This document shows, piece by piece, positions 938 through 30,213 of a stretch of DNA of 64,000 bases. The notes under the pieces were generated by a model that made no database searches, had not been told where the DNA came from, and saw only the letters and a program-made list of their open reading frames with translations. The DNA lies in assembly GCA_002104905.1 (NCBI GenBank), contig MCFE01000226.1, forward strand, positions 1 through 64,000. The letters are read 5' to 3'. Both the position numbers and the translations under genes were made by a program. The stretch is from Basidiobolus meristosporus CBS 931.73. Taxonomy: Eukaryota > Fungi > Basidiobolomycota. Positions within the stretch are counted from its first letter, which is position 1. Each line of letters begins with the position of its first letter.

Positions 938-1359
938 TACTCACTTGTAATTTATTGACTCATATCCAAGTGGCCTTCCTTCTCAGTCGATGGCTGGTTT
1001 TCCTTGCTGAAATCCAAGGTCACCTGATAACGAGCTCCCGACTTCTCAGCACATAGCTTGTTGATATAAAATATCCAAGATTTGAAATGATGCGGTTGCT
1101 GAAACAAGCAAGAGGAAGGAAATCTTCGTGACAGCACGGCGGATTCCCTCATAAAATTGACAACCTTCTATACCTTACTCTATGCAACTCAAGCTACCAT
1201 TTGACTATTTATGACACCAACTTCGTGTCAGTTGAACAAGAGACATCATGCATAGCAGAAAAAAAATTGCTGCCATCCACTGGTCGATTATATATAGTCA
1301 TTTCTTGTGTAACAGAACCTGCTTAAAAATGCGGAAAAGCAAACAGAGCCGACGATAAC

Positions 1360-1625
1360 AGAAACAGAGGAAAAGGTGCTGGTAACTATAATTCTGGATG
1401 TGGCGGTACTGGCGATGAATATAGCGGTAACAGCGGTAATAGTGGTGCTGGGAACGGACGGGGTAGCAATGGTGGTCACAACGGGAATGCAGGAAACGGA
1501 GCTAGAGGCTGTAACTCTAGAAGCGGCGGTGCGGAGGATGGAGGTGCTGGCATGGAAATGGAAGTAATGGCAATGGCAGTGTCAGCGAAAGCGGGAGCTA
1601 GTTGTTCGTTTATTGGTTGAAACTA
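1360..1625 (+). other. Gly/Asn/Ser-rich low-complexity frame without a clear start (degenerate coding repeat)
   Basis: Open frame GKGAGNYNSGCGGTGDEYSGNSGNSGAGNG...MEMEVMAMAVSAKAGAS; related copies at ~3480-3695, ~18120-18215 (-) and 20385-20699 (-). Confidence 0.35.
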
Positions 1626-1764
1626 GCAAAGGCATATTTTTTTGCGTTATCCAGGCATAGGCTATTAACATGTACTTGGGCATTATGCATAGCCATCTTT
1701 GCTTCACATACCCAGTCTGGACCAAAGCCAAGTACCGGACATTCCATCAGCAGCGTTTACATGA

Positions 1765-2433
1765 CTAATAGTAACAATTCTCGTAAGGATTTATGGTAAA
1801 CGGAGCTTTGTAGCCATTTTTTGGCATCATGGGTAGCACCACACTACTGCGAAGTCCATTCCTGATCATATTTTCGGTGGCAGGGATGATTGTGTTATAT
1901 TGAGATCCAGGACCATGCGGGATCATACATACTCGCTCCCCAACACAGTTGGGCTCGCTATAGAAGCAATAAATAGCTTCAGTAGGCCAGTAAAGGACAA
2001 AGCCTCCGTTATTTTCAACGGGGTCAATGTTTGCACACTGCCTAAACTCAGGATACGTGATAGGGAAGCCACCCACGCTGCTGGCATCACTGGCTAAAGA
2101 AATTGTTGCAGTTGCGGCAACATTTCCGTTCGCATCATCGTCCTCAATAGCTGCTTGGTTGGAGGGGCTACTCCAGATCAGAAACCTTGCATCCAGCTCT
2201 GATGCCACCACGCCAGAGAACCATGCAGGGTTGCAAACAGGAAAGCCACCATATAGATTCTGCGCCTCTGCGGAGTCGTTACAAGGAGCATCAACAGGGT
2301 ACTCTTGCACAATTGGTGTGGAATTAAGTGCAGGGATCTTCCCCGTGAGGTCAAGAGTGATCCCAGTAGGCTTAGCTAAGGCAGAAGTAGCAAGCACGGT
2401 CCAAACAGCTAGGTCGACCAAACGAAGTTGCAT
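1765..2433 (-). CDS. Secreted Cys-containing protein of unknown function, 222 aa (copy 1)
   Basis: ATG at 2433 opens a signal-peptide-like MQLRLVDLAVWTVLATSALA; TATA-like element upstream; four paralogues in the window, three with intact frames; six conserved Cys. Confidence 0.8.
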   Translation of the reverse strand: MQLRLVDLAVWTVLATSALAKPTGITLDLTGKIPALNSTPIVQEYPVDAPCNDSAEAQNLYGGFPVCNPAWFSGVVASELDARFLIWSSPSNQAAIEDDDANGNVAATATISLASDASSVGGFPITYPEFRQCANIDPVENNGGFVLYWPTEAIYCFYSEPNCVGERVCMIPHGPGSQYNTIIPATENMIRNGLRSSVVLPMMPKNGYKAPFTINPYENCYY

Positions 2434-3837
2434 TTTAATCTTTGGGGTTGGGATGCTCCACAAATACACGCATATCATCTATTATATACCGATAATGCCC
2501 CACTTTCCCTTCGATTTCTGACTGATGCCATATCGCAGTGGAAAATTCCATCCTTCTGATTTTTGTCTGCTATCATTTTTCCACCTCATTCAACCAAACA
2601 CTATGTGGCAACAACATCCGGACGACACCCAGGAGCCACAATTATTCATGACAGTAGAACATTCTATTATGTTACTTAATTTAGTAATACAAGCGGGTTT
2701 TTGTCAGTGTAGCATTCTAGCTGCGTCCTATCGACCAACTTGGTGGAGATGTGTTCAACACTGCAGCACATGTAACATAAGATAGATTTACAAAAAAAAA
2801 GAAACTGACATCAAATACAAGTCATGTATCAACCTGTTCTTACAAAATGATATTTTAGCCTAGTGTGCAAGATACAAATACAGCGGATAGTCTGTATCTT
2901 TCCAAGTTTGTGAAGGATAAGCGATAATACAGTCAGTATCGGTGATGTCAATGTATAATCGTTTAGTAATTAATGGCATCAAACAATGTTGATTTTACCG
3001 TACTATCGTTACGCTGCAAGTAAGGAGTGTGAGTGGCCTCCAAGACTAAAAGCTTACCATATTTGATCTATCACTCCATACTGGGTAATCTTTTTTATGC
3101 ATCATGACCTAGAATTAATACATCCTACGCCTAGCCAGTGGTCTATTGTAATTTGGCCTCTATTTTCTTTGCCCGTAGCATTTATGTACTTCCATTTTTG
3201 CCTAAATTCGCCGATAAGGGATAAATACGGTTAGAGAATGTAGTTATCATGGGCCTTGTTTATTACTAATCCCAAGCAGCGCGATCGATTTGCGTGAACT
3301 TGTACGGGCAAATGGGGTTAGGGAAATCAGCAGATGCCAAGACCATTACTTATTTTAGGCCTTCAGGCAGGTTTCCAATCTATATCGTCATTGAGGTGTA
3401 TAGATGCTACGTGATAGCCGAGTACGCTGGTTGAACAGACACGGCGAGAAGACGATCAAACATGTGAGATCTTTGTATGGTAAAGTGGGAATGGCTATAG
3501 TATTAGTGGTAATGCGGGTGCTGGGAACGGAGTGGGTAGCAATGGTGGTCACAACGGGAATGCAGGAAACGGAGCTAGAGGCTGTAACTCTAGAAGCGGC
3601 GGTACGGAGGATGGAGGTGCTGGCATGGAAATGGAAGTAATGGCAATGGCAGTGTCAGCGAAAGCGGGAGCTAGTTGTTCGTTTATTGGTTGAAACTAGC
3701 AAAGGCATATTTTTTTGCGTTATCCAGGCATAGGCTATTAACATGTACTTGGGCATTATGCATAGCCATCTTTGCTTCACATACCCAGTCTGGACCAAAG
3801 CCAAGTACCGGACATTCCATCAGCAGCGTTTACATGA

Positions 3838-4461
3838 CTAATAGTAACAATTCTCGTAAGGATTTATGGTAAACGGAGCTTTGTAGCCATTTTTTGGCAT
3901 CATGGGTAGCACCACACTACTGCGAAGTCCATTCCTGATCATATTTTCGTGGCAGGGATGATTGTGTTATATTGAGATCTAGGACCATGAGGGATCATAC
4001 ACACTCGTTATCCAACACAGTTGGGCTCGCTATAGAAGCAATAAATAGCTTCAGTAGGCCAGTAAAGGACAAAGCCTCCGTTATTTTCAACGGGGTCAAT
4101 GTTTGCGCACTGCCTAAACTCAGGATATGTGATGGGGAAGCCATCCACACCGCTGACATCACCGGTCAAAGAAATTGGCGCAGTTGCGGCAACAGTTTCG
4201 TTGACGTCGTTGTCTTCAATGGCTGCTTGGTTGGCGGGGCTACTCCAGATCAGAAACTTTGCATCCAGCTCTGATGCCACCACCCCGGAGAACCACGCAG
4301 GATTACAAACAGGAAAGCCACCATATAGATTCTGCGCCTCTGCGGAGTCGTTACAAGGAGCATCAATAGGGTACTCTTGCACAATCGGTGTGGAAGTAAG
4401 TGCAGGAATCAGAAGTAGCAAGTACGGTCCAAACAGCTAGGTCGGTCAAGCGAAGTTGCAT
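3838..4461 (-). pseudogene. Pseudogene of the 222-aa secreted protein (copy 2)
   Basis: Versus copy 1: ~44-bp frameshifting deletion near 4410, GAG>TAA at 4008-4010 and a 1-bp deletion near 3949. Confidence 0.85.
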
Positions 4462-7400
4462 ATTAGTCTTTGGGGTTGGGATGCTCCATAAATACGCGCG
4501 TATCATCAATTATATACCAATGATGCTCCTGTTTCGCTCCGTTGTCTGACTGATGCCTTATCGCAGTGGAAAATTCCATCCGTCTGATTTTTGCTTGCTA
4601 TCATTTTTCCACCTCATTCCACCAAACACTAGGTGGCAACGGCATCTTGACGACACCCAGGATCCACAGAATTATTCATGACAATAGAATATTCTATTAC
4701 GTTACTCAATTTAGTAATACAAGCGGGTTTTTGTCAGTATGGCATTCTAGCTGCTATCTACCGACCAACTTGGTGGAGGGATGTTCAATACTGCAGCACA
4801 TGTCACATACGAGAGATTTACCACAGGGGCGAGAGAAAAAGTTGATATCACTTGAGAGGCCGAGTGAGGTATATCCTTGTCATGTATCCACTCGATCCTA
4901 CAAAACTGACCCGGTGTGCAAAATGCAAATTTTTTTGTGATAGGCCCAAGGATGAGCGATAATGCGGCCAGTGTAGAATTATTTGGTATGTGAGGAGATC
5001 ACACAATATGGATATTGATGCACCATTCGAGTTGTGCATTATTAGCCTTGAATGCTGCCTTCTGAGCCTCATGTTATGGATAGCCGCAGTAAGGAGTATG
5101 GATGGCCTCTTTTTATTCATAGAATCATTTTATCCTGCGCCTAGCCAGTCGTCTATTTTAATTTGGCTTCTATTTTCATTGCCGGTAATGCTTGTAGGTA
5201 CCTCCGTTTTTGACGAAATCCGTATGTCAGCCAGATTTTGATGCTCATATTGCCACTGCAGTGAGGCATAAAAAACGCCTTGTCTTAAGTCGAAGTATTT
5301 TGCTAGAATATGGGAGAAAACTAAACACACCAAGAGCTGCTGTTAAGTATGGCTTCTCAGGGAGATATGGGGTAATACAACAGAATCAGTAAAAGGTAAA
5401 CTTGCCCAGTCTAGTATAATACTCTTTTGTTAGTTTGGGAGGAGGCAAAGCCTCAATGCTGTACAGAAAAATTGTTTAAGAAACTCTATTCTGGATGGTA
5501 ATTTAGATACAGTAATCACTCCCATAAGCATGTGAGGTGCTCAGATGAAAAGTACTATTCTGTTCCGTAAATGCGTCATTGTGATGAAGTCTTCAGTGAG
5601 GGTAGGAGGGTAATAATCACCAACAGGTGAAATCTTTATTTCAATGACTCATAATAGAGAAGCAAAATGCTACACGGGTAGCTTTATAACAAGTGAACAA
5701 AGAGAAGGATCATTTGCGATAGCTTATATAAGTGGCCACTAAGCTGAGCAGGAGTCGTGAAAGGGTTAAGTGGCCGTGGAGGTATAATTGAAGGAAGTAG
5801 TGGCTTATTGAGAAGTACTAATGATATTCCATCCAACAGTGTCATTATCCGCTACATCGGTGATGGCCTGTCAAGGTTGACTGCCGCGTGATAAACAGAA
5901 TCTGTTGACCAACATCGAGTTGAATAGCCTCTCAATTGCAGTTGTAAATACCGACACCTTCTTCCGAATCGTTTTCTGGATCGAATTCTATGAATGAAAT
6001 ACTGTCTTGTGGACTACGTTGCCGGATGTGGAATCATGCCTCGGATGGTACTGAATTCATTTCGACCACATCAATTCAGCTTTTTATTGTGCAGATAGCA
6101 ACAGGAAGGTATCGTACACACATAGCAAAGTACTGATGCTGCTAAGTGTACATTTCATTCGATAGCAACGGTGTGGATACTAACTTGGACATGGCTTAGT
6201 GCTCCATGCGATCGGTTATAGCTTAAGCCATACACATTAAGCGGTTCTAAATCGGTAATGCTGTGAAGATTTTTCTTTCGATTCCTTTTGACGCGACTCA
6301 GTAACACGGTGTAAATAAGTGTATATTAAAAGAAATAAGTACCTGACCCAGTACCTATTTGAGCTATATATATACATATCAACATTCAGTGATGCACTCG
6401 AAAGGGCTCTACAAGTGGCGTTAGATGAATTTTTTTCCAAATTTTCTTACTGTATATTCGTCCATGTATCAACAAATCGATCGACGTATACTTGTCATCT
6501 ACGAATAGAAGTAGCCGTAGCAGGTAACGAAACCTCCAGGATTCGATTGAACGGCTCGTAAAGGATTATCATTAGCGGCAATTCTATACAGCCATTCACC
6601 CACACTGACTTTCGTTTAGAAGACGAAATGGACCTTAGACTCGGCTCTCAGGTATATGAAGCCTATATTAGCTCTCATGAAGTCCAAGAATCTATTGTGC
6701 GCCACGGTTACCAAGAATATACATTCTTTCCAATAGATTTACGATTAAACCTCTGTACAATGAAGGTTTTTATTGCTGGAAAGGCTTACAATTGGCCTAT
6801 TACAACCTTTTGAGCACCAATAAAGATCCCTGTTGGATGACTTAGTACAGGCAAAATTTCGTGGTAGCTTTGTTACTTACTTCGGACAGTAATCATGATG
6901 AAATACGGGTGATAATCCATCTCAAGCAACGAACGCACATCCTGTAAGCTGCCATGATAATTGTTTTACTGACGTAAAGACTGTCCAAACCAATTTTCAA
7001 GAGCGATTCTGGAAGCCCAGACCAAAATGCATGCTCAAGGTGGGTAAAGATATTGTCTACACTACCTCAATTTTCAAGGAGAGGCATGATGCCGAGTCTG
7101 AGTCAGCGGGCATCGAAGCCACCAGCCATATCATTTCCATCAATCGGCAATCGAGATATCCGACGCGGAACATGTGGTAACCAGTTACCGAATTGAGTGG
7201 TGATACATGGAAACTTGTGATAATATTCAAGTCAAACTACAAATAGAAGCGTTTCAATGGGCACGTTTTATCATCCGAAGGATATACTAACCACATATGC
7301 ATGCCATATTTTTCATAAAATCGACTACAATGCACCCTGAGACCAATCAACTTAAATCCAGCTAGTCGGGAGTGATACACGATATAATCTCAAATACCAT

Positions 7401-7759
7401 CTTAGGGCCAAGTAGTTGATCAAAAACCCGATCCGGAAATAGTACAGAGATCTACACAAACTTTGGTGGTCATTGGCTGGTTCCAAATTTATTTGGCGCA
7501 CTATGGAACCCAGAAAGTCAACTAAAACACCCATATTTGGCAATGATGGAAATAACGACCAGGCCTTCAATTGCCAATATCAGACAGAAAATGTGATCTA
7601 ACCAGCACAGGCTAAAACGCCGCTCATAAAAAGTTTGATCGTAATTGTCGGTGCAACACGTGATACCTGAATTTATTGATGGTAGTTCGCAAAAACGGTG
7701 TAAACGCATTACACCTGGTGACGAGCAACACGAGAGTGCTGAACATGTAAAGGGCACAA

Positions 7760-8752
7760 TTACTGTGCCTTTGCGGTCTTCTTGACTTCGAACCGGCGGT
7801 TGGTTGCAGGGGCATCATATTCCAGTTTAGTGGAGCCTTTACAGTAAGCATCAGTGGTGCCACAGTAGCCATAGCTGGAGCAGCAGTAGCCAGGTTGGCA
7901 CTGACGCATCACATCTCCAAACCAGCCACAACGTCTATCAGTTTGATTTGCAACAACAATGTCTATTCCCAAATTATTGGGATCGTATGGATACCACTGC
8001 CATTGTATGGGTTTGTTGTTATATCCATCGTAGCCAGCCGGGCCGTTGATAGACATCCAGATAGCCGTTTTATTATCTGCGAAGCCTGCACCCCATGTGC
8101 CGTCGGGACCAGGATATGTATAAGATATTGAGCCACCTAGCGAGGGGTACCAATACTTGCTGCCATTATGTTTGTAGGCTTGTTTACTCCAAACGCCCAC
8201 GCGCATTCCATTGTCGAGTCCCTGGGGATTTTCGAGAAATTGGTCGAAGCGGCCAAGACCATTGCTTAGGTTGTCGTTGATAACCCGCAGTTTACCAAAT
8301 AGCATCCATTCGTCATCAATACGTAGTTGGGCTGTGTAGATCAAATAATCACCATCCTCCTCGTAATCAATCTGGAAGCCGTAATCCACTCCATCAAGCC
8401 ATGGATAGAAGTACTGCATGTGGGACCCAGTGCCCTCGTGACCAAAGCGACTAGTCACACACTCCTTGCATGTCTCCACTACGGTTGCTCGTCCTTTGGA
8501 GTTGTCCCAGAGAGAGAAGAGGAATACACGTTTTTCGGCCCATGTCTGCATTCCCATATATCCGTTGTTCCAGCCGATGGCCTCCCAGTAAGTTTGGTTG
8601 GGACTAAATTCAGGAACAGACCTAACGTCAGTCTGAAAGGAGATAAACTTCTTCCCATCATCGGGGAGACTGGCATGGTTGTGCATTGCCTGCGAGAGCA
8701 CCTTTGCTGCGAACAGCCAGGTAAGCGAGAGGAAAAGGGTTGGAAGCTGCAT
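7760..8752 (-). CDS. Secreted DUF3472-like domain + C-terminal hevein/CBM18 chitin-binding domain, 330 aa (copy 1)
   Basis: Signal peptide MQLPTLFLSLTWLFAAKVLS. GYMGMQ...VFLFSLW...FGHEGTG...YPW...QFLEN motifs recalled as DUF3472. CGxxxxxxxCxxGYCCSSYGYCGTTDAYC is a hevein-like CBM18 signature. Single ORF. Confidence 0.8.
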   Translation of the reverse strand: MQLPTLFLSLTWLFAAKVLSQAMHNHASLPDDGKKFISFQTDVRSVPEFSPNQTYWEAIGWNNGYMGMQTWAEKRVFLFSLWDNSKGRATVVETCKECVTSRFGHEGTGSHMQYFYPWLDGVDYGFQIDYEEDGDYLIYTAQLRIDDEWMLFGKLRVINDNLSNGLGRFDQFLENPQGLDNGMRVGVWSKQAYKHNGSKYWYPSLGGSISYTYPGPDGTWGAGFADNKTAIWMSINGPAGYDGYNNKPIQWQWYPYDPNNLGIDIVVANQTDRRCGWFGDVMRQCQPGYCCSSYGYCGTTDAYCKGSTKLEYDAPATNRRFEVKKTAKAQ

Positions 8753-11700
8753 GATATTCCACCGAAACATGGAACTCGACCATGCTTATAAAGCAGTTCC
8801 ATTTTGCCAACACAAAGATCACTTTTCATTACAAATTATGAAAACAAGCAGAGATTTCACCCTGATTTAGTAGTGGATGATTGTGCTCTACTATTGTGGC
8901 AACTCGGGTAGTTGAGTACCACTTAGTATGAAATGAACGGATCCTCAATGGTGATCCACGGATAAATAACATCGTTGATGATGGTTTCATGCGGCTTATA
9001 GAAGATTCCAAAACTAAGGATATCTTACATACTGGTCTTGATAAATGGCGGTCCAAGGAAGGATTATCTGAATACGGATGTAGCGGCTCCTACAGTGCAC
9101 ACATGACGCATTAGTATACAGTCAGTGAACCTAGAGTGTTCTATCATAGCGCGAGGAATTCGGAACTACAATAATGGCATAGGCTATAAGCAGTAACTTG
9201 TGCACAACCCTCTTTCTTCTCAGCAATTGTGAAGCTCGGAAGAGGCTATGCCAACACCACAGCCATCGAGGGTCAAATCCAACGCTTCAGTTAGGAAATA
9301 TAGACATTCTTCACCATGCGCCAAGGAGCACGAGCATGGCGAGACAGTTTGCCAAAAATAAGTTGCAATGTACGCGCTGCTCCAGAACGTCAACGCAATC
9401 TAGCATACCCACTAATAATGATCAGTGTCTAAAATGCAGTGGCGATAGCTTGTCCACTGCTCATTTCACAAATTACTCACACATTTGGAATATAGCTTAA
9501 CCATACCTCAGGTGATATTTCAGCGTTCCTCGTGTATCATACCTTCATAGACACTCTCATAGAACTTCATAGTATCCGGGTGTATAAGGTTAAGGTTCCG
9601 ATTGCTTGACTTAATAAATGTTCCGATTAAGGTTAGTTCAATGTGGCCAATAGATTACCTAAAATAATCTTTGTCGAGATTCCGATTTAGAGTTAGCATT
9701 ATGTTTCAGTAAGGAGCTGAGCATCATGGAAAATCACACTAAACTCCATTTTTGACCAAGCCGATAAACACATAGATTTCCCTTTTCTGAAAGTATCATT
9801 CGATTTGGTTGATGCAACCAGGGTCTGATTGATGGACAACAAATATGTGATGGGGGATCAATGGGTCATGCAAGATGGTGGTATCAGCGGGCTGGCCAAG
9901 CCTATTGGTTGTGCCAAAATTTTACTTATATGGAAAACCCCACTTAAAAATATGGCTTAGGGGCTAGTCGGAATACTTAGAAAGATAAACATTTGCGCAG
10001 GCCCAACATACTCCCCATTTCCAGGGCTTTGTGTCAGACCTTGTATCAGCTTCTTATCCCGTCCGAAGTAAGTCTGGAAAATACCAAAATTTACCGGATT
10101 GATTGAACTGGAACGACATGACTTATTATCAACAATCGACACACAATCACTCATTGGGCAACTGGAATACCGAGGTCATTGTTCCGTGCTTCAGGTGCAC
10201 GTACGCGGCCAATCATTATTAGCATCAATAGAGGGGAAAGTTAAGATGCAGGCATTCTGGTAACAGTCAGGGGAGGGAAAGCCACCAGTATGGTGAGATC
10301 CTTATCTTACTAAGTAGGTACAAAGTTACCAAGGCTAAAGTAAAGAAGGCCGCAAAGATTAATTGAATATCATTAGTAAATAGTCTAACTTGAGCTTTGT
10401 TTCTTGGGTGATATTGCACTGAATTATATGAGGTTACTCTCAGGAGAAGAGAAAATCAAAGTGCGTTGGGAAATTACATATTATAAATGCATTTTTCTAT
10501 AGAATAAATAATACAGTTTGGGCTTTTCTGCTCTCAGTAACTTTACAGCTAGAACAGTAACTGGCACAAAGTCGGCAAAGATATGCCAGCATGAAATCTT
10601 GTGGGAGCGCTACTTAGCGCTAGGAAGGAGGAAAAGTCAATAAGAGTTGGTGAGATCTATATTTGCAGTCAAAAATATGGCAAAAAATTAAGCCGGTAGG
10701 GATGTACATCTTATGGTGAGAATTTTAGTGCTTTTACAGGATGACAACAGTACATAGTTTAACACAGAAGCTCTAGAAATAGATACTGGTTGTAACACAG
10801 CTGGAGCAAGTAAGAATAATAGCTGCAAGCCATTTGAGTAAGTGGCTTCATTCAATTCAGGGCAACGTAACCAAGAAACAAAGTTCTAGATTGCTTACTT
10901 GGGATGGTGAGTAACACTTTCCTGGCTTCCTTACCTTAGCTTTAGTAGTTTTGTACATACTGAGTGAGATAAAGATCTCACTATACTGGTGGCTTTCCCT
11001 CACCTGGCCATTACCACAATGCCCGCATCCTAACTTTTCTCTTTATTAATATTGATAATGATTGGCCACATACTTACGCCCCGAAGCACTAAACAGTGGC
11101 TTCAGTATCCCAATTGCCCAATGAGTTTGCTGAATGTTGGTCATAAGTCATGTTGTTCCAGTTCAATCAATCCGGGAAATTTTGGTATTTTCCAGATTTA
11201 CTTCTGACGGAACAGGAAGCTGATGCAAGATCTGTCACGAAGCCCTGGAAATGGGGAGTATGTCGGGTCTGCGCAAATGTTTATCTTTCAAAGTGTTCCG
11301 ACGAGCCCCTAAGCCATATTTTTAAGTGGGGTTTTCCATATAAGCAAACCTTTGGCAAGATCAAAAGGCTTGGCCAGCCCGCAGATACCTCTATCTCGCA
11401 TCACCTATCAATCCTCCATCCCACATTTGTCGACCACCAATCGGACCCTGGTTGCATCAACCAAATCAAATGATACTTTCAGAAAAGGGAAATCTATGTG
11501 TTTATCGGCTTGGTCAAAAATGGAGTTTAGTGTGATTTTCCATGATGCTCAGCTCCTTACTGAAACATAATGCTAACTCTAAATCGGAATCTCGACAAAG
11601 ATTATTTTAGGTAATCTATTGGCCACATTGAACTAACCTTAATCGGAACATTTATTAAGTCAAGCAATCGGAACCTTAACCTTATACACCCGGATACTAT

Positions 11701-12533
11701 GAAGTTCTATGAGAGTGTCTATGAAGGTATGATACGCGAGGAACGCTGAAATATCACGTGCGGTATGGCTAAACTATATTCCAAATGTGTGAGTAATTTG
11801 TGAAATGAGCAGTGGACAGGCTATCGCCACCGCATTTTAGACACTGATCATTATTAGTAGATATGCTAGAATGTGTTGACGTTCTGGAGCAGTGCGCACA
11901 TTACAACTCATCTTTGGCAAACTGTCTCACCAGGATATTGCATCCGCCATGCTCGTGCTCCTTGGCGCATGGTGAAGAATGTCTATATTTCCTAAATGAA
12001 GCGTTGGATTTGACCCTCGATGGCTGTGGTGTTGGTATAGCCTCTTCCGAGCTTCACAATTGCTGAGAAGAAAGAGGGTTGTGCACAAGTTACTGCTTAT
12101 AGCCTATGCCATTATTGTAGTTCCAAATTCCTCGCGCTATGATAGAACACTCTAGGTTCACTGACTGTATACTAATGCGTCATGTGTGCACTGTAGGAGC
12201 AGCTACATCCGAATTCAGATAATCCTTCCTTGGACCGTCATTTATCAAGACCAGTATGTAAGATACCCTTAGTTTTGGAATCTTCTATAAGCCGCATGAA
12301 ACCATCATCAACGATGTTATTTATCCGTGGATCACCATTGAGGATCCGTTCATTTCATACTAAGTGGTACTCAACTACCCGAGTTGCCACAATAGTAGAG
12401 CACAATCATCCACTACTAAATCAGGGTGAAATCTCTGCTTGTTCTCATAATTTGTAACGAAACGTGATCGTTGTGTTGGCAAAATGGAACTGCTTTATAA
12501 GCATGGTCGAGTTCCATGTTTCGGTAGAATATC

Positions 12534-13526: not shown

Positions 13527-16500
13527 TTGTGCCCTTTACATGTTCAGCACTCTCGTATTGCTCGTCACCAAGTGTAATGCGTTTACACCGTTTTTGCGAA
13601 CTACCATCAATAAATTCAGGTATCACGTGTTGCACCGACAATTACGATCAAACTTTTTATGAGCGGCGTTTTAGCCTGTGCTGGTTAGATCACATTTTCT
13701 GTCTGATATTGGCAATTGAAGGCCTGGTCGTTATTTCCATCATTACCAAATATGGGTATTTCAGTTGACTTTCTGGGTTCCGCAGTGTGCCAAATAAATT
13801 TGGAGCCAGCCAATGACCACCGAATATCTGTGTAGATCTGTGTACGATTTCCGGATCGGGTTTTTGATCAACTACTTGGCCCTAAGATGGTATTTGAGAT
13901 TATATCGTGTAGCACTCCCGACTAGCTGGATTTCAGTAGATTGGTCTCAGGGTGCATTGTAGGCAATTTTATGAAAAATATGGCATGCATATGTGGTTAG
14001 TATCTCCTTCGGATGATAAAACGTGCCCATTGAAACGCTTCTCTTTGTAGTTTGACTTGAATATTATCATAAGTTTCCATATATCACCACTCAATTCGGT
14101 AACTGGTTACCATATGTTGCGCGTCGGATATCTCGATTACCGATTGATGGAAATGATAGGCTGGTGGCTTCGATGCCCGCTGACTCAGACTCGGCATCAT
14201 GCCTCTCCTTGAAAATTGAGGTAGTGTAGACAATATCTTTACCCACCTTGAGCATGCATTTTGGTCTGGGCTTCCAGAATCGCCCTTGAAAATTGATTTG
14301 GACAATCTTTACGACAGTAAAACAATATCATGGCAGCTTACAGGATGTGCGTTCGTTGCTTGAGATGGATTATCACCCATATTTCATCATGATTACTGTC
14401 CGAAATAAGTAACAGAGCCACCCCGAACTTTGGCCTGTACTAAGTCATCCAACAGAGATCTTTATTGGTGCTCAAAAGGTTGTAATAGGCCAATTGTAAG
14501 TCTTTCTGGTAATCAAAACGTTCATGGTACAGTGGTTCAATCGTGAATCTATTGAAGAAAATGTATATTCTAGGTAATTGTGGCTGACAATAGATTCTTG
14601 GATTTCATGACAGCTAATATAGGCTTCATATACCTCTGAGCTGAGTCTAAGGTCCATTTCGTCTTCTAAACGAAAGTCAGTGTGGGTGAATGGCTGTATA
14701 GAATTGCCGCTAATGATGATGCTTTACAAGCCATCCAATCAAATCCTGGAGGTTTCGTTTCTTGCTACGGCTACTTCTGCTTGCGGATGACAAGTATATG
14801 TGATCGATTTGTTAATCCATGGACGAATATACAGTAAGAAAATTGGGAAGAGATTTTATTTAACGCCACTTCTAGAGCCCTTTCAATTGCATTACTGAAT
14901 GTTGATTTGTACATATATAGCTCAAATAGGTACTGGTTCAGGTACTTATTTCTTTTAATATATACTTATTAATAGCGCCTGACCGAGTCGCGTCAAAAGG
15001 AATCGAAAGAAATGGAGCACTAAGCCAGGTCCAAGTTAGTAAGCACACCATCGCTATCAAATGAAACATACACTTAGCAGCGTCAGTACTTTGCCGTGTG
15101 CGTACGACAGCTTCCTGTTACTAACTGCTCAATAAAAAACTGAATTAATATGGTAGAAATAAATTCAGTACCGTTTGAGGCATGACTCAAAATCCGGCAA
15201 TGTAGTCGACAAAACAGTAAATCCTTCATAAAATTCAATCCAGAAAACGATTTGGAAGATGAAAGTATCGGTATTTACAACTGCAAATGAGAGGCTATTC
15301 ATCTAAATGTTGATCAACAGATTCTGTTTATCACGCGGCGATCCACCTTGGTAGGTCACCGCCGATGTAGCCAAAAATGACTTTGTTATATGAAATATCA
15401 TTAGCTCCTCTCAATAACCCATTACCTCCTTCAGTTATACCCCCACAGCCACTTAACCCTGTCTTGACTCCTTTTCAGCTTAGTAGTCATTTATATAAGC
15501 TGTCGCAAAAAGATACCTCTCTTTGTTCACTTGTTAAAAAGCTACACATATCGCACTTTGCTTCGTTATTATGAGTTATTGAAATAAAGATTTCACTTTA
15601 TGGTGACTGTCACCCTCCTACCCTCACTAAAGACTTCATCACAATGATGCATTTACGGAGCAGCATAGTACTTGTCATCTGAGCACTTCACATGCTTGTG
15701 GGAGTGATTACTGTATCTAAATAACCGTCTAGAATAGAGTTTCCTCTTAAACAACTTGTCTATGCAGCATTTGAGCTGTGTCTTCCCCCAGTCCAACTAA
15801 CAATGAGAGATAATAAAAAAGCGGTTTTGCTGATTATATTGCAATATCCCATATCTCCCTGAGAAACCACACTTATCAGCAGCACTTGGTGTGTTTAGTT
15901 TTCTCACATATTGTAGCAAAATACTTCGACTTGGGGCAAAGCGTTTTTTATGATTCACTGCAATGGCAGTATGATCATCAAATTCTGGTTGAAATGCTAC
16001 CGCTCCCATCCATTCATGTTGAGCTACTGTTGTTTTATCAAAAGTCACTGACATCTCTGAGCTCGGTATTAGCTACAATCGAGCTGATTTACTTCTAAAA
16101 GCCATCTGAAATTGACTCATACCTTTATGCATTGTTTGAAGAGCTCAGCACCGCAATGATGATGTAAATGCCAATTTCTTGAACCCCATTTGCCCATACA
16201 AGTTCATACAGATTGATCGAGCACTTGGATTAGTAATAAAGATTGTTCGTGATAACTACATTCGCAAACCATATTTATTCTCTATCGGCGAATTTCGTCA
16301 AAAATGGAAGTACATACAAGTATTACGAGCAATGAAAATAGAAGCCAAATTACAATAGACCATTGGCTAGGCGCAGAATATGATGATTCTATGAATAAAA
16401 AAAGACCATCAATTCTCCTCACTGAGGCTATCCATAACATGAAGCTTAGAAGGCAGCGTTCAAGGCTAATGTACAACTCAGATGGTGCATCAATATTCAT

Positions 16501-17073
16501 ATTGTGCGATCTTGTGACACACCAAATAATTTCACACTGGCTGTATTATCCCTCATCCTTGGGCCAATAACAACAGACCTGGTAAGACCAATAAATTTGC
16601 ATCTTACACATCGGGTCAGTTTTGTAGGAGCAAGTAGATACATGACATATATACAAGGATATACCTCACTCGTGCTCTCATTTGATATCTACTTCTTTGA
16701 CTAGCCCCTTTTGGCAAATCTATCTTTTTTCACATGTGTTGCAGTGTTGACCACCACTCCACCAAGTTGGTCGGTAGGAAGCAGCTAGAATGTTGTACTG
16801 ACAAACAACCACTTGCATTACTATATTGAGTAGCGTAATAGAATATTCCACTTTCATGAATACCTCTGCGGCTGCTTGGCGTGGTCAAGATGCTGTTGCC
16901 ACCTAGTGTCTGGTAGGATGAGGTGGAAAAATGATAGCAGGCAAAAATCAGACGGATGGAATTTTCCACTGCGATAAGGCATCAGTCAGACAACGGAGGG
17001 AAGCAGGGGCATCATCGGTATATAATAGATGCTATGCATGTATTTGTGGAGCATCCCAACCCCAAAGATTAAT

Positions 17074-17742
17074 ATGCAACTTCGCTTGACTGCCCTAGCT
17101 GTTTGGACCGTGCTTGCTGCTTCTGCCTTAGCTAAGCCTACCGGGATCACTCTTGACCTCACGGGGAAGATTCCTGCGCTTACTTCCACACCGATTGAGC
17201 AAGAGTACCCTGTTGATGCTCCTTGTAACAACTCCGATGAGGCGCAGAATCTATATGGAGGCTTTCCTGTTTGCAACCCTGCATGGTTCTCCGGGGTGGT
17301 GGCATCAGAGCTGGATGCAAGGTTTTTGATCTGGAGTAGCCCCGCCAACCAAGCAGCCATTGAGGACAACGATGTCAACGAAACTGTTGCCGCAACTGCG
17401 ACAATTTCTTTAGCCAGTGATGCCAGCGGCGTGGATGGCTTCCCCATCACGTATCCTGAGTTTAGGCAGTGCGCAAACATTGACCCCGTTGAGAATAACG
17501 GAGGATTTGTCCTTTACTGGCCTACCGAAGCCATTTATTGCTTTTATAGCGAACCCAACTGTGTCGGAGAACGTGTTTGTATGATCCCACATGGTCCTGG
17601 ATCTCAGTATAACACAATCATCCCTGCCACCGAAAATATGATCAAGAATGGACTTCGCAGTAGTGTGGTGTTACCCATGATGCCAAAAAATGGCTACAAA
17701 GCTCCGTTTACCATGAATCCTTTCGAGAATTATGACTATTAG
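17074..17742 (+). CDS. Secreted Cys-containing protein of unknown function, 222 aa (copy 3)
   Basis: ATG 17074, TATATAA at 17019-17025; about 19 aa differences from copy 1; same protein as copy 4. Confidence 0.8.
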   Translation: MQLRLTALAVWTVLAASALAKPTGITLDLTGKIPALTSTPIEQEYPVDAPCNNSDEAQNLYGGFPVCNPAWFSGVVASELDARFLIWSSPANQAAIEDNDVNETVAATATISLASDASGVDGFPITYPEFRQCANIDPVENNGGFVLYWPTEAIYCFYSEPNCVGERVCMIPHGPGSQYNTIIPATENMIKNGLRSSVVLPMMPKNGYKAPFTMNPFENYDY

Positions 17743-19279
17743 TCATGTAAACACTGCCAATGGATTTCTGGTGCCTGGCTTCTGTCCAGATTGATTGTAT
17801 GAAACGAAGACCACTACGCACAGTGCCTAAGTACATTTTAGTAACTTATGCAAGGATAACCCAAAGAAATATGGCTTTACTTGTTTTGACTAATAAACGA
17901 ACAAAAGTTGCATGGTTATTGTTATATGTACTTCTGACTGCAAAACCCGATACCAGGAATACCAGGCATTTCCGAGGCTACATATGCTGTTGTTTCAAGT
18001 GCAGCCTGTTACAGAGTGTCGTAAGCAGCAGTTTATCCATGCTGATATTTTGGATAATCTGGGAGAGCCAAATGGAATCATGAAAAGCAGTATATACTGA
18101 GTACACCGGAATCACAAATTCCCGCCCCGTTACCTGCATTCTCGTCATTATCACCATTGCCATCCTCTCCGCTTCCAGCACCATCATTACCACTAATACT
18201 ACTGCCATTCCCACTGAACCCTATAAAGACCTCATACGTGGGTAAACGTCTTCTCCCCGTTTTTGTTTATCTGGCGTACTCGGCTGTTACGTAGCATCCA
18301 CACACCTCAATGACGATGCAGATTGGAAGCCTCCCTTAATACCTAAAAAAAGGAATGATCTTGGCATCAATCGATTTTCCTAACCCCATTGCCCATACAA
18401 GTTCATGCAAATCGATCGAGCCACTTGGGATTAGTGATAAAGAATGCTCATGATAACTACATTCTCTAACCGTATTTATTCCTTACCGGGGAATTTCATC
18501 AAAAATGGAAGTACATACAAGTATTAAGGGCGACGAAAATAGAGGCCAAATTACAATAGACCATCGGCTAGGCGCAGGAAATGTTGATTCTAGGTCATGA
18601 TGCATAAAAAAGATTACCCAGTATGGAGTGATAGACCAAATATGGTTAACTTTTAATCTTGGAGGCCACTCACACTCCTTACTGACTGTGTCCAGGGCTA
18701 ATGCGCAAGGATGATACAGTAAAATTCACACCTTCAATTGCCGGATGTTTCGACACTGGCATCACTGGCCGTATTATCGCTCATCCGTAACAAACTTGGA
18801 AAGAACCAGACCATCCACTAAATTTGTAACATGCACTTCGGGCTAAACTATCCGTTTGGTAGGAACAAGTTGATACATGGCTTGTGTTTGATATTGGTTT
18901 CTTTTTCTCGCCCTTTTTGGTAAATCTATCTTTTGTCACATGTGTTGCAGTGTTGACCACCACTCCACCAAGTTGGTCGGTAGGAAGCAGCTAGAATGTT
19001 GTACTGACAAACAACCACTTGCATTACTATATTGAGTAGCGTAATAGAATATTCCACTTTCATGAATACCTCTGCGGCTGCTTGGCGTGGTCAGGATGCT
19101 GTTGCCACCTAGTGTCTGGTAGGATGAGGTGGAAAAATGATAGCAAGCAAAAATCAGACGGATGGAATTTTCCACTGCGATAAGGCATCAGTCGGACAAC
19201 GGAGGGAAGCAGGGGCATCATCGGTATATAATAGATGCTATGCGTGTATTTGTGGAGCATCCCAACCCCAAAGATTAAT

Positions 19280-19948
19280 ATGCAACTTCGCTTGACTGCC
19301 CTAGCTGTTTGGACCGTGCTTGCTGCTTCTGCCTTAGCTAAGCCTACCGGGATCACTCTTGACCTCACGGGGAAGATTCCTGCGCTTACTTCCACACCGA
19401 TTGAGCAAGAGTACCCTGTTGATGCTCCTTGTAACAACTCCGATGAGGCGCAGAATCTATATGGAGGCTTTCCTGTTTGCAACCCTGCATGGTTCTCCGG
19501 GGTGGTGGCATCAGAGCTGGATGCAAGGTTTTTGATCTGGAGTAGCCCCGCCAACCAAGCAGCCATTGAGGACAACGATGTCAACGAAACTGTTGCCGCA
19601 ACTGCGACAATTTCTTTAGCCAGTGATGCCAGCGGCGTGGATGGCTTCCCCATCACGTATCCTGAGTTTAGGCAGTGCGCAAACATTGACCCCGTTGAGA
19701 ATAACGGAGGATTTGTCCTTTACTGGCCTACCGAAGCCATCTATTGCTTTTATAGCGAACCCAACTGTGTCGGAGAACGTGTTTGTATGATCCCACATGG
19801 TCCTGGATCTCAGTATAACACAATCATCCCTGCCACCGAAAATATGATCAAGAATGGACTTCGCAGTAGTGTGGTGTTACCCATGATGCCAAAAAATGGC
19901 TACAAAGCTCCGTTTACCATGAATCCTTTCGAGAATTATGACTATTAG
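19280..19948 (+). CDS. Secreted Cys-containing protein of unknown function, 222 aa (copy 4)
   Basis: ATG 19280, TATATAA at 19225-19231; translation identical to copy 3. Confidence 0.8.
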   Translation: MQLRLTALAVWTVLAASALAKPTGITLDLTGKIPALTSTPIEQEYPVDAPCNNSDEAQNLYGGFPVCNPAWFSGVVASELDARFLIWSSPANQAAIEDNDVNETVAATATISLASDASGVDGFPITYPEFRQCANIDPVENNGGFVLYWPTEAIYCFYSEPNCVGERVCMIPHGPGSQYNTIIPATENMIKNGLRSSVVLPMMPKNGYKAPFTMNPFENYDY

Positions 19949-22841
19949 TCATGTAAACAATGCCGATGGACTTCTGGTGCTTGGCTTCGGTCCACATTGG
20001 TTATATGAAATGAAGACCACTATGCACAGTGCCTAAGTACATTTTAACACCTTATGCAAAGATAACCCAAACAAATATGCCTTTACTTGTTTTGACCAAT
20101 AAACGAACAAAAGTTGCATGGTTATTGTTATATGTACTTCTGACTGCAAAACCCGATACCAGGAATATCAGGCATTTCCGAGGTAACATATGCTGTTGTT
20201 TCAAGTACAGCTTGTTACAGAGTGTTGTAAGCAGTAGTTCATCCATGTGGGCATTTTGAATAATCTGGGAGAGCAAAACTGAACCATGAAAAGCAGTATA
20301 TACTGAGTACACCAGCGCGCGTTGACCTGAAACCTGGAGCCATTATAATGGTAGTTACTTCGCTAGGTTACAAATAATTACATGTTACATTTTAGTTGTA
20401 CTGGCCTCCGCCTTCGTTGACACCACCATTGCCATTACTTCCGTTTCCGTGCCACTACCTCCAGCCCCGTTTCCTGCATCCCTGTCACTACCTTCATTGC
20501 TAGCCCCTCGGTTCCCAGCATCACTATAACCGCTGCTACCGCTGCCGGTATCATAAGCACTAGTACTGTTTCCATCATTATCACTACCGCTATTACCATT
20601 CCCATTATCACCACTGTTGCCGCTATTTCCATTGCCAGCACCGCCGCTTCCAGAATTATGGCCATAAGCATTTCCCCCCGTTTCTGTTACCATCGGCACA
20701 GTTTGCTGCTCCGGATTTTTAAGCAGGTTCTGTTACATGAGAAATGACTATGTATAACCGACTGATAAATGGCTTCAACTATTTTTCCATTATGTATGAT
20801 ACCTGTTGTTTAACTGGTACTAAGTTGGTGTCATAAATAATTAGATGGTAGCTAGAGTGGCATAGAGAAAGCGGTAGAGGGTTGTCAATTTCATAAGGGA
20901 ATTCACCATGTAGTCACCCAGCTTCCCTTCCTCTTGCTTGTTGCAGCAATCTCATATTTGCAAATTCCAGGTATTTCATACTAATGAGCTACATTCTCAG
21001 TAGTTGGGAGCTTGTTATTAGGAGACATTGGCTTTCAGCAAAGAAAACTAGCCATTGACTGAGAAGTAAAGTTACTCAGACTTGAGTGAATGAATTCTGA
21101 CAAGTACACATGCTTCCAACAGTAAAATATTTCAAAGAGCATCATCAATGGCCATTTGTTCAGCAAGGCCAATGCACTATCAAAATTTTATTAACTTGAT
21201 CAAGCACAAGCCATTGGTCAGACCCTTTGTCTATCCAAACAGCAACAGCCCAAATTTATCATCCTGCAGCTGGCAGCTTGTTTACATGCTTCAAGAATAG
21301 GTATTTTAGTAGCAACAGGCTTTAGACAATAAAGTGAGGAGGGGAGTGACACAATATGCTTGTTAGGACAAAGACAAGCTGATAGATAAATATAATGAGA
21401 AATAATTATAAGTTAAGTACTATCAGGGTGCTACACTAAAACAAATACCAATACATTAAGCCACCTTGCTAGCTGACAACCACAATATTGCTATTTGAAA
21501 TTGTGCTTAGGTTAAGCAGATCACTAAATTAGGATCAATGTATTTACCAAGTGACAACCAAGCTATAACAAATTAAATCAAATAGCAGCAACCATTAAAA
21601 AACAAACTGTTTGCCCAGTATTCTCAGCCAGCATAATATATATTCATTGCAAAAGATGTGAGCCAACAGGTTTTATTTTCAAATAATTTAGTGGTTGTCA
21701 GGATATGTCCCAGCTACCACCTGTAGGCATAAATTCAGGCTTGCCTGCCTCTCATGTTTCCAATGCATTGGTAACTGTGGCACCCATCATTGAGCACCTC
21801 AGACATGGGCCTTAGGAATATTTTCAAGCCTGGAGCTCATCAGATTAATTGCTGGTAATCTGCGGGAATTCAATTGGTATTTTGCAAGCATTTGGCAAAT
21901 TTTTTTCCTTCATATTTTAGTTAAAAATCCCAATGGAAGTAGTTGGTGGCTGATTACCACACTTGGTGTGAAAGCTGACTCAACTATGCTACTGCTAGAG
22001 AGCAGGGTGGTACATCTGACAAATACTTAATACCTGGAGTGTTGAGAGCTGAATGCTAGGTGAGAGTTGGTGGTCTCCTCATAGTTGAAAAATACATTGC
22101 CAGTCTTTTCAGTATTTTTTTCTTGCCAAGCTTCACTCACAGAAGAGCGCTTTGGTTAACTCTACATTCCCTGTGCTAAACAGCTATTATGTCAGTTTTT
22201 GCTGATACTTTCAAAATAAGTAACAAATATTCTTACAAAAGGTAACTGGAAAGTTTTCATAAAAAGGTCATCACTAAATCAAAATCCTGGGACTATGAGG
22301 TATTGGCACTAGTAGGACACCATGCCAAAATTGTTGAACAAAAAGTGCACTTCAGATTTTAGAAACAACTTGTTCAAAATTTCTTTTTACAACATTATGT
22401 AGGTGGTATTACACTGGTTCTCATCCCTTTTCTCACTTTCTTATTCCAGATACTGAATCACCTTCTATATCTGTGTACATTAATAAGTTATTACCACTTT
22501 CTTGTTGTATTTATCAAGTTGTTACCTAAATATTCATGCTAACTTTGTCACATGTATCTTATTCCTTGATGGACTTTCTGTCCTGATCAAATTGCATGTT
22601 GGGACTTGGAATATTTTTACCAAATTATCAGGTACTACAATTATGACATTACACAAAGCTGTCCAAAAGACACCAATCTTTGAGCACATATTCCTAGGAC
22701 CATCTTCAGCAAACTTTACACATTTGTTTGCCTTACTTTATTAAAAGTATAAATAACATTCTTTTGATCAATAAATCAACAGTGAATAAAATGTTAAATT
22801 GCTAGCTCTTGACATCACCTCAAACACCCCCCAGAACATGG

Positions 22842-29901: not shown

Positions 29902-30213
29902 TGTTGTGAGAGCTTTAAAGATGTTGGAAGTGATTGGGAGAACAAGTAGATTATGTGGTTTTCACTCAATGATTTATTGAATGTAAAAGCAGTATCTATA
30001 CTTTTACATGATCTTGGCATAAAAAACACTTAGATTATGTTTGGGAAGGTCCCACAAGCATGCGTGCAGAGTTTGGGGGGCTTTAACAGGTTCGAGAATA
30101 TTTATGTTTCAAGTACCAATATTCCAAGTAAATTCCAACAAGGAATTTAGTCGGTCTTCTCTAAGTGACTAGGTTAGGTGATTAGTTAGGTGGAATTCCG
30201 AATTTTTACAACA
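29902..30213 (-). mobile_element. Solo LTR with perfect 5-bp target-site duplication
   Basis: TGTTG...CAACA termini; GAAAC on both sides (29897-29901 and 30214-30218); reverse complement matches the LTR at 25519. Confidence 0.85.

What the first reader, a model, noticed from the sequence alone, without database searches (positions are those of the whole stretch)
944..21104. A 20-kb gene-bearing palindrome holding only secreted-protein genes
Seen: two ~10-kb inverted arms around a ~0.4-kb spacer. The only credible genes in it are two DUF3472-CBM18 copies and four copies of a 222-aa secreted protein. The arms differ by substitutions and indels, so this is not a simple fold-back read artefact. 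Inference: an amplification structure that raises dosage and allows arm-to-arm repair of effector-like genes, analogous to sex-chromosome palindromes. I do not know of a description in early-diverging fungi.
Basis: partly seen in the sequence, partly recalled or inferred. Interest (0 to 1): 0.75.

Follow-up and report, generated by a model that had tools for sequence, protein, structure and literature searches.

The report
Old gene palindrome with local copy-correction
A 20-kb mirror-image duplication in the fungus Basidiobolus meristosporus is real but old and mostly decayed. Copy-correction keeps only about 3 kb around one secreted chitin-binding gene pair nearly identical, so it is an ordinary inverted duplication and not a sex-chromosome-style repair device.

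Summary
The palindrome is real. The arms are 943-10438 and 10841-21105, collinear and inverted, around a 402-bp spacer. They differ by 1033 substitutions and 43 indels, so this is not a fold-back read artefact. Homology stops at both outer edges, which argues against two haplotypes or homeologs joined by misassembly.

The window is a 122.5-kb PacBio contig of Basidiobolus meristosporus CBS 931.73.

Gene content:
- Two head-to-head DUF3472-hevein (CBM18) genes.
- Four units of a 222-aa signal-peptide protein. Only three are intact. The left inner copy is a pseudogene.

Arm identity is about 76-88% in non-coding DNA, against 95% or more over 6900-9800 and about 99% over 7484-9233. dS is 0.015 for the DUF3472 pair and 0.24 for the 222-aa genes between arms. 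Arm-to-arm gene conversion is therefore real but confined to about 30% of the arm. Conversion also acts between tandem copies within each arm. The tandem duplication came before the inversion.

The 222-aa family is Basidiobolus-only, under purifying selection (dN/dS 0.17), and probably carries a beta-gamma-crystallin-like C-terminal domain.

This scan already met the same kind of DUF3472 palindrome on another contig, and many conversion-homogenised inverted pairs in this genome.

The parts
943..10438 (.). Left arm of the palindrome (9.5 kb)
   Evidence: Collinear inverted match to the right arm. Outer edge, inner edge.
10439..10840 (.). Unique spacer (402 bp), no arm homology, no ORF
   Evidence: Identity falls to random level at 10466-10640. 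The innermost blastn match is 10150-10438 with 11125-10841. The spacer holds only a 13-nt mini-palindrome.
10841..21105 (.). Right arm of the palindrome (10.3 kb). It is longer mainly through two ~290-bp segments absent from the left arm (15998-16289 and 20111-20400).
7760..8752 (-). Left DUF3472 + hevein/CBM18 gene (330 aa, signal-peptide-like N-terminus), transcribed away from the centre
   Evidence: Pfam PF11958 E 8e-39 and PF00187 E 2e-8. The exact protein is in public annotation as a 330-aa single-exon model.
12534..13526 (+). Right DUF3472 + hevein/CBM18 gene (330 aa). It differs from the left copy by 6 nt and 2 aa.
   Evidence: dN 0.004, dS 0.015
6900..9800 (.). Left side of the high-identity island (>=95%; ~99% at 7484-9233), read as conversion tract(s). 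It has a sharp inner edge at ~9800 and a graded outer edge.
   Evidence: 100-bp identity profile and perfect runs of up to 332 bp, including 267 bp of non-coding DNA. Fisher tests against non-coding arm DNA give p 2e-55 and 2e-23.
11469..14385 (.). Right side of the same high-identity island
1765..2433 (-). 222-aa gene, left outer copy, intact
   Evidence: ORF. 91% aa identity to the right copies. In the public annotation it is merged with the pseudogene into a chimeric 391-aa model, ORX93699.1.
3841..4461 (-). 222-aa gene, left inner copy: pseudogene (44-bp deletion, in-frame stop, 1-bp deletion). Its 3' end and 3' flank are identical to the left outer copy.
   Evidence: Four-way alignment, tblastn fragments, segment identities
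17074..17742 (+). 222-aa gene, right inner copy, intact
   Evidence: the exact protein is annotated
19280..19948 (+). 222-aa gene, right outer copy, intact. Same protein as the right inner copy, 1 synonymous difference.
   Evidence: dS 0.007
853..940 (+). Copy of a dispersed ~90-nt motif ending in (CCCTAA)2.5, directly abutting the left outer edge of the palindrome. Other copies lie at 109-199, 5596-5666/15540-15627, 10291-10404/~10880-10982 (innermost arms, inverted) and 30213-30312.

Best explanation
This is an old, bounded inverted segmental duplication (a palindrome) in a secreted-protein-rich region of the B. meristosporus genome. It has been only partly homogenised by gene conversion since it formed.

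Inferred order of events:
1. A ~2.1-kb unit carrying the 222-aa gene was duplicated in tandem.
2. A ~10-kb segment holding both units and one DUF3472-hevein gene was duplicated in inverted orientation around a ~0.4-kb spacer. The likely route was a fold-back or template-switch event. This is an inference.
3. The arms then diverged by about 14-24% in non-coding DNA, and one 222-aa unit decayed.
4. Intrachromosomal gene conversion repeatedly overwrote a ~2.9-kb tract centred on the DUF3472-hevein gene between the arms. Conversion between direct tandem copies homogenised the 222-aa genes within each arm.

I infer that the identity island sustains itself. Purifying selection on the DUF3472 gene slows divergence there. 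Recombination needs near-identical substrate, so conversion keeps happening in the island and stops elsewhere.

The functional outcome is two near-identical, divergently transcribed copies of a secreted chitin-binding protein and three working copies of a Basidiobolus-specific secreted protein. The dosage benefit is plausible but not shown.
For: Structure.

Bounded duplication: homology ends at 943 and 21105. Nothing in 1-942 matches anything in the 43 kb to the right.

Conversion between the arms:
- dS is 0.015 for the DUF pair against 0.23-0.24 for the 222-aa genes in the same collinear arms.
- Non-coding flanks of the DUF gene are 97-98% identical, against 86% for non-coding 4500-6900 (p 2e-23).
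- There is a 267-bp perfect non-coding run with a sharp edge at ~9800.

Order of events: in far-upstream unit DNA the positional partners across arms are 78-87% identical, while within-arm pairs are 41-69%.

Within-arm conversion: the right copies are 99-100% identical across the CDS, and the left copies are 99-100% identical in the 3' flank.

Ordinary divergence, not RIP or read error: the substitution spectrum is symmetric, Ts/Tv is 1.83 and differences concentrate at third codon positions.

Second assembled copy: each of the two exact DUF protein variants is recorded on two contigs. I did not verify that note.
Against: - The inverted junction rests on one PacBio assembly plus indirect counts.
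- The mechanism of origin cannot be read from the sequence after this much divergence.
- The graded fall of identity toward the centre (98, 90, 86, 76%) may reflect nested conversion tracts. It may instead reflect a pre-existing inverted pair of a dispersed element at the centre. I could not decide between these.
- Expression, and therefore any dosage effect, is untested.
Confidence: 0.75

Rival explanations
1. Assembly artefact: two diverged paralogous, homeologous or allelic loci were joined head-to-head by the assembler, so no palindrome exists in the genome.
For: The genome is a single PacBio assembly (PMC7466969). It holds many near-identical copies of both gene families on at least 7 contigs. 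An earlier scan note suspects a fold-back artefact at the end of a sister contig. The junction could not be checked with reads.
Against: Homeologs or alleles should stay collinear outward, but homology stops at matching points on both arms (943 and 21105) with unrelated flanks. The arms are too diverged for alleles (dS 0.24, non-coding 76-88%). The 99% island lies inside the arms and not at the junction, which needs real physical interaction or an extra coincidence. Both DUF variants appear together on a second contig by count.
Confidence: 0.1
2. An actively maintained, adaptive palindrome in the sex-chromosome sense, selected because arm-to-arm conversion repairs and amplifies effector-like genes.
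For: Arm-to-arm conversion is demonstrable at the DUF3472-hevein pair, including its promoter side. All genes in the arms encode signal-peptide proteins. The same layout may recur on another contig.
Against: About 70% of the arm is not homogenised. One 222-aa unit is a pseudogene although its partner on the other arm is intact, and they are 93% identical. The 222-aa genes are homogenised within arms, not between them. dN/dS of 0.17 shows no diversifying, effector-like pattern. Local conversion is expected for any close inverted duplicate and needs no selection for the structure.
Confidence: 0.1
3. A giant foldback-type mobile element whose long inverted arms captured host genes.
For: Small foldback elements exist in this window (25792-26535) and in this genome. 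A dispersed short motif sits at the left outer edge and at the innermost arms.
Against: No arm sequence recurs elsewhere in the 64-kb window apart from the ~90-nt motif. No target-site duplication or matching terminal motif appears at the right edge. No transposase or other mobility gene was found in the arms.
Confidence: 0.03
4. The 99% island reflects purifying selection on the DUF3472-hevein gene alone, without gene conversion.
For: The island is centred on the only long conserved gene.
Against: Synonymous divergence is 16-fold lower than in the neighbouring genes of the same arms. About 1.9 kb of flanking non-coding DNA is also 96-100% identical.
Confidence: 0.02

Closest known systems
Primate Y-chromosome palindromes P1-P8 (Rozen et al. 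2003, as cited in PMC5490193 and PMC3681731; PMC6790999)
   Same: Gene-bearing inverted arms around a short unique spacer, with arm-to-arm gene conversion demonstrable.
   Different: By established knowledge, Y palindrome arms are tens of kb to Mb long and above 99.9% identical along their whole length. Here the arms are ~10 kb and 86% identical overall, conversion covers only ~2.9 kb, and one arm gene has decayed. There is no link to a non-recombining chromosome.
Autosomal gene palindromes of Folsomia candida (11) and Adineta vaga (17) (PMC5490193)
   Same: Inverted collinear gene blocks containing tandemly amplified genes. Ks between arms is about 0.2, very close to the 0.24 found here for the 222-aa genes.
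   Different: Those were defined at the gene-order level in asexual animals and discussed as a substitute for meiotic recombination. Here a single locus in a fungus shows a sharply localised conversion island.
Long inverted repeats with ORFs in Candida albicans (PMC6591007) and the large palindrome on Zymoseptoria tritici chromosome 14 (PMC3681731)
   Same: Fungal precedents for long inverted duplications that take part in recombination. The Z. tritici palindrome is flanked by transposon remnants, and here a dispersed short repeat abuts the left edge.
   Different: Those are in Dikarya, and the Z. tritici one lies in gene-poor inserted DNA. This one is in a zoopagomycete and consists of secretome genes.
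Fold-back or short-inverted-repeat-primed inverted duplications in yeast (PMC10622511; Butler et al. 1996 as cited in PMC3681731)
   Same: The product architecture is the same: an inverted duplication with a short unique spacer. Possibly short inverted copies of a dispersed element sit at the inner ends of the arms.
   Different: The mechanism is only inferred here. Divergence has erased the junction details, and no triplication or chromosome-end structure is seen.

Membership tests
Palindrome maintained by arm-to-arm gene conversion (sex-chromosome type) | Two inverted arms around a short unique spacer | tested here: met
   Arms 943-10438 and 10841-21105 with a 402-bp spacer
Palindrome maintained by arm-to-arm gene conversion (sex-chromosome type) | Near-identity (>99%) along the whole arms | tested here: not met
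   Identity is 76-88% in most non-coding DNA and 92-93% in the 222-aa CDS. Only 6900-9800 reaches >=95%.
Palindrome maintained by arm-to-arm gene conversion (sex-chromosome type) | Evidence of conversion between arms | tested here: met
   Met locally: dS 0.015 against 0.24, non-coding flanks 97-98%, perfect runs up to 332 bp
Palindrome maintained by arm-to-arm gene conversion (sex-chromosome type) | Structure conserved across related species while paralogs cluster by species | not testable with these tools
Metagenome scans found nothing.
Bounded inverted segmental duplication | Collinear inverted homology that ends at matching points, with unrelated flanks | tested here: met
DUF3472 (PF11958) + chitin-binding type 1 / CBM18 hevein (PF00187) | Both Pfam models matched above their gathering scores | tested here: met
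   134 bits (cut-off 24.8) and 34.5 bits (cut-off 27.8) for both copies. There are also PDB sequence hits to pokeweed lectins for the hevein part.
Beta-gamma-crystallin superfamily (Crystall / Inhibitor_I36 / killer-toxin-like), for the 222-aa protein | Match to a family profile | tested here: not met
   No Pfam hit for any of 15 family members at E<=1. No PDB sequence hit.
Beta-gamma-crystallin superfamily (Crystall / Inhibitor_I36 / killer-toxin-like), for the 222-aa protein | Double Greek-key fold and Y/F-x4-Y/F-x-G signature | tested here: inconclusive
   The AF2 model is weak (pLDDT 43 overall, 56-72 for residues 123-203). The top 18 VIA-align rows are all this fold, at Z 4.8-6.5. Foldseek lists the same fold but with E >= 0.14. 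A 27-aa motif matches a multi-repeat Crystall/I36 protein: phmmer E 6e-6, hhalign E 5.5e-4 with probability 30%. Atlas rows name Crystall, I36 and Syncollin at 0.77-0.84. In the motif the second aromatic residue is replaced by Cys.
Foldback transposon | Terminal inverted repeats with target-site duplication and multiple genomic copies | tested here: not met
   No TSD at 943 or 21105. The arms are unique within the window.
Repeat-induced point mutation (RIP) on duplicated DNA | Excess of C-to-T / G-to-A changes between copies | tested here: not met
   The four transition classes are nearly equal (155-175 each) and Ts/Tv is 1.83.

The most novel reading that the evidence does not exclude
The locus may be one instance of a genome-wide habit of Basidiobolus. 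Many old inverted gene pairs, including a second DUF3472-hevein palindrome, may each keep a gene-centred island of identity through recurrent conversion. If so, concerted evolution of inverted duplicates would be a systematic feature of this large, highly duplicated, possibly polyploid genome, and the DUF3472-hevein pair would be selectively kept as two identical head-to-head copies.
Probability: 0.2. Interest if true: 0.55.

Novelty: new member of a known kind. Interest (0 to 1): 0.3.

Why it matters
This locus shows clearly how a palindrome ages. Conversion survives only in a self-sustaining island around the most constrained gene, while the rest of the arms drift and one gene dies.

For Basidiobolus biology it documents three things:
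- Local duplication and concerted evolution of secretome genes: a chitin-binding DUF3472-hevein protein and a genus-specific, probably beta-gamma-crystallin-like protein.
- Their position next to a GH18 chitinase gene, a sugar-transporter gene and an array of CHAP-domain genes.
- Public annotation errors at the locus: a chimeric gene model, and a likely mirrored contig end elsewhere in the assembly.

It does not open a new class of system.

Tried and rejected
No cross-contig or cross-species comparison of the junction was possible.
- Metagenome scans with the DUF3472-hevein and 222-aa proteins: no relatives.
- Rfam scan of the window: nothing.
- Tandem Repeats Finder on 1-24000: nothing. The G/N/S-rich ORF near the right edge is therefore not a simple repeat array.
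- Structure prediction of the 222-aa protein with 6 close sequences: useless (pLDDT 28.5). With 15 sequences only the C-terminal domain is usable.
- Pfam and PDB sequence searches for the 222-aa family: no hits.
- RIP as the source of arm divergence: rejected.
- The two ~290-bp right-arm-only segments as one inserted element: rejected. They are unrelated to each other and belong to the tandem-unit sequence.
- A third C-terminal module, present in the 463/467-aa paralogs, downstream of the window's DUF genes: not detected.
- Scan-notes look-ups by sequence and by relatives: blank.

The left inner pseudogene was only aligned and described. It was not mended.


Full report
OBSERVATION. The repeat finder reports more than 25 collinear inverted blocks between 949 and 21096. 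blastn of the left half against the right half gives one collinear minus-strand chain. A global alignment of the arms is collinear throughout. A local alignment places the outer edges at 943 and 21105. Sensitive blastn places the inner edges at 10438 and 10841. The arms are therefore 9.5 and 10.3 kb, with a 402-bp spacer that has no arm homology. The arms differ by 1033 substitutions and 43 indels of up to 292 bp. No arm sequence recurs elsewhere in the 64-kb window, apart from a ~90-nt motif described below.

ORGANISM AND ASSEMBLY. The exact proteins of the window are in public annotation. A 391-aa model, ORX93699.1 of Basidiobolus meristosporus CBS 931.73, lies on a 122,520-bp contig. It is a chimeric fusion of the two left-arm 222-aa units. 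The window therefore comes from that contig. The genome was sequenced with PacBio (PMC7466969).

GENES. Both arms carry a 330-aa gene with DUF3472 (PF11958, E 8e-39) and a hevein/CBM18 module (PF00187, E 2e-8). The genes lie at 7760-8752 (minus) and 12534-13526 (plus), head-to-head and 3.8 kb apart. Longer paralogs elsewhere in the genome (463 and 467 aa) have a third module that I could not detect here.

Each arm also carries two tandem ~2.1-2.2-kb units with a 222-aa gene. Three of these genes are intact: 1765-2433 (minus), 17074-17742 (plus) and 19280-19948 (plus). The left inner copy (~3841-4461, minus) is a pseudogene with a 44-bp deletion, an in-frame stop and a 1-bp deletion.

No other ORF in the arms matched Pfam. 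ORFs shared by the arms lose their frame or differ heavily at the protein level. Both protein families start with a short, hydrophobic, signal-peptide-like N-terminus. 'Secreted' is an inference from that.

IDENTITY LANDSCAPE. Arm-to-arm identity, from the outer edge to the centre:
- 78% at the outer edge.
- 80-88% in most non-coding DNA (86% for 4500-6900).
- 92-93% in the 222-aa coding regions.
- 95% or more from ~6900 to ~9800, and ~99% over 7484-9233.
- Inward of 9800 it falls through 89% and 80% to 76%, and then to noise.

The island has a sharp inner edge at ~9800 (100% dropping to 85% within 100 bp) and a graded outer edge. It contains perfect runs of up to 332 bp, including 267 bp of non-coding DNA.

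The two DUF3472 genes differ at 6 of 990 nt (dN 0.004, dS 0.015). The 222-aa genes of the two arms have dS 0.23-0.24 and dN/dS 0.17. All these genes sit in the same collinear arms, so a single duplication date would predict equal dS. The 16-fold deficit at the DUF pair, together with its 97-98% identical non-coding flanks, shows recent arm-to-arm gene conversion and not selection alone. Fisher tests against other non-coding arm DNA give p 2e-23 for the non-coding flanks and p 2e-55 for the whole core. The substitution spectrum is symmetric, with Ts/Tv 1.83. RIP-like mutation and read error are therefore not the source of the divergence.

ORDER OF EVENTS. I aligned the four tandem units. In DNA far upstream of the genes, positional partners across arms are the closest pairs:
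- left outer with right outer: 80-87%;
- left inner with right inner: 78-86%;
- pairs within one arm: 41-69%.

The tandem duplication therefore predates the inverted duplication. Closer to the genes the pattern reverses. The two right copies are 99-100% identical across promoter and CDS (dS 0.007). The two left copies are 99-100% identical over the last part of the CDS and about 300 bp of 3' flank. Conversion thus also acts between direct tandem copies within each arm, including between the intact left gene and its dead neighbour.

IS IT AN ARTEFACT? A fold-back read artefact is excluded by structured divergence: the third-codon-position bias, the indels and the pseudogene. A chimeric join of two homeologs or alleles is unlikely, for three reasons.
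- Homology stops at matching points on both arms, and nothing in 1-942 matches the 43 kb on the right.
- dS of 0.24 is far beyond allelic divergence.
- The identity island lies inside the arms and not at the join.

Indirect support comes from contig counts. Each of the two exact DUF protein variants is recorded on two contigs. A 67.7-kb contig carries two identical 222-aa genes (ORX88974 and ORX88977) separated by two genes, and these proteins differ by one residue from the window's right-arm copies. That note describes a DUF3472-hevein palindrome on another contig whose perfect outer arms look like an assembly fold-back. Reads and depth remain the decisive missing evidence.

WHAT THE CARGO IS. 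DUF3472 is a mostly bacterial domain of unknown function that has moved repeatedly into eukaryotes (PMC7864903). Its only solved relative is an uncharacterised protein (4qhw). Here it is fused to a chitin-binding hevein module.

The 222-aa family is restricted to Basidiobolus in a search of 1.84 billion cluster representatives. That search gave 9 hits, all from B. meristosporus or B. ranarum, except one metagenomic multi-repeat beta-gamma-crystallin/I36 protein that matched on a 27-aa Greek-key motif. In the same genome the family has at least 17 genes above 85% identity, in small arrays on at least 7 contigs, plus divergent members at 21-35% identity.

A weak AlphaFold model (pLDDT 43 overall, 56-72 for residues 123-203) gives beta-gamma-crystallin domains as the top 18 VIA-align rows. 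These have Z 4.8-6.5, below the level that excludes a common arrangement, and they include the Williopsis killer toxin. Foldseek lists the same fold without significance. The protein atlas names Crystall, Inhibitor_I36 and Syncollin clusters at 0.77-0.84, and a LysM14_C-containing ascomycete cluster at 0.93. I rate a beta-gamma-crystallin-like C-terminal domain at about 0.6. Any antimicrobial or inhibitor role is speculation.

The neighbourhood holds a GH18 chitinase gene, a sugar-transporter gene and an array of CHAP-domain genes. The region is therefore rich in secreted proteins that act on cell walls.

MECHANISM. Shown:
- a bounded inverted duplication;
- local arm-to-arm conversion;
- within-arm conversion;
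- the decay of one unit.

Inferred:
- Origin by a fold-back or template-switch event.
- A self-sustaining identity island. Purifying selection on the DUF3472 gene slows divergence there. Homologous recombination needs near-identical substrate, so conversion continues in the island and stops elsewhere.
- Greater stability of inverted copies than of tandem copies, because crossovers between inverted copies invert the DNA between them and do not delete it.

One unexplained detail may bear on the origin. A dispersed ~90-nt motif ending in (CCCTAA)2.5-3 abuts the left outer edge (853-940). It occurs once per arm at homologous positions. It also forms the innermost, least similar (76%) part of the arms in inverted orientation. 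It could have been a pre-existing short inverted repeat that seeded the fold-back. I could not test this.

COMPARISON AND NOVELTY. The architecture matches gene-bearing palindromes known from primate Y chromosomes, Folsomia candida and Adineta vaga (PMC5490193). Ks in the Folsomia palindromes is about 0.2, like here. Fungal precedents are the Zymoseptoria tritici chromosome 14 palindrome (PMC3681731) and the long inverted repeats of Candida albicans (PMC6591007). This locus fails the defining feature of sex-chromosome-type palindromes, which is whole-arm near-identity, and one arm gene has died unrepaired. Earlier notes of this scan report the same kind of DUF3472 palindrome on another contig, and at least eight other conversion-homogenised inverted pairs in this genome. 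I did not check those notes.

VERDICT. This is a real, old inverted duplication with mosaic gene conversion. It is a new member of a known kind and of modest interest.

Noticed in passing
window 853-940 and 109-199; also 5596-5666, 15540-15627, 10291-10404, ~10880-10982, 30213-30312: A dispersed ~90-nt motif with the core AAATAAAGATTTCACC..GGTGA. In the two left-flank copies it ends in 2.5-3 telomere-like CCCTAA units. One copy abuts the left edge of the palindrome, and an inverted pair forms the innermost arms. The telomere-like 12-mer is strongly over-represented: 5 hits against 0.18 expected.
   Followed up: partly
window 25792-26535: A ~745-bp foldback element with ~350-bp arms (93% complementary, 40-nt loop) in the AT-rich stretch to the right of the palindrome. 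It resembles the foldback family noted elsewhere in this genome by the scan.
   Followed up: no
window 27936-28274: An ORF fragment with a Copia-type reverse transcriptase match (RVT_2, E 1.5e-12). The 22-30 kb stretch has low GC (36-39%) and repeat remnants.
   Followed up: no
window 1765-4461 (public model ORX93699.1): The public 391-aa gene model fuses the left inner pseudogene and the left outer intact 222-aa gene through out-of-frame stretches. It is a chimeric annotation, and the intact left outer gene is not annotated on its own.
   Followed up: yes
window 30734-37017: Neighbouring genes: a zinc-type alcohol dehydrogenase fragment (30734-31396, minus), a GH18 chitinase-like gene (34315-35304, plus) and a sugar transporter (35536-37017, minus). 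They are followed by the array of CHAP-domain genes at 38-53.6 kb. The region is rich in proteins acting on cell walls.
   Followed up: partly
222-aa protein, residues ~105-205 (e.g. window 17074-17742): This Basidiobolus-only family has six conserved cysteines. Its C-terminal domain gives consistent but weak beta-gamma-crystallin signals, related to Inhibitor_I36 and killer-toxin folds. These signals come from fold search, a shared Greek-key motif and the protein atlas.
   Followed up: partly
other contigs of the same genome (67.7-kb contig, ORX88974-ORX88977): Two identical 222-aa genes separated by two genes, differing by one residue from the window's right-arm copies. Both exact DUF variants of the window are recorded on a second contig. 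This fits a redundant or allelic contig of this locus with a mirrored (fold-back) end.
   Followed up: partly
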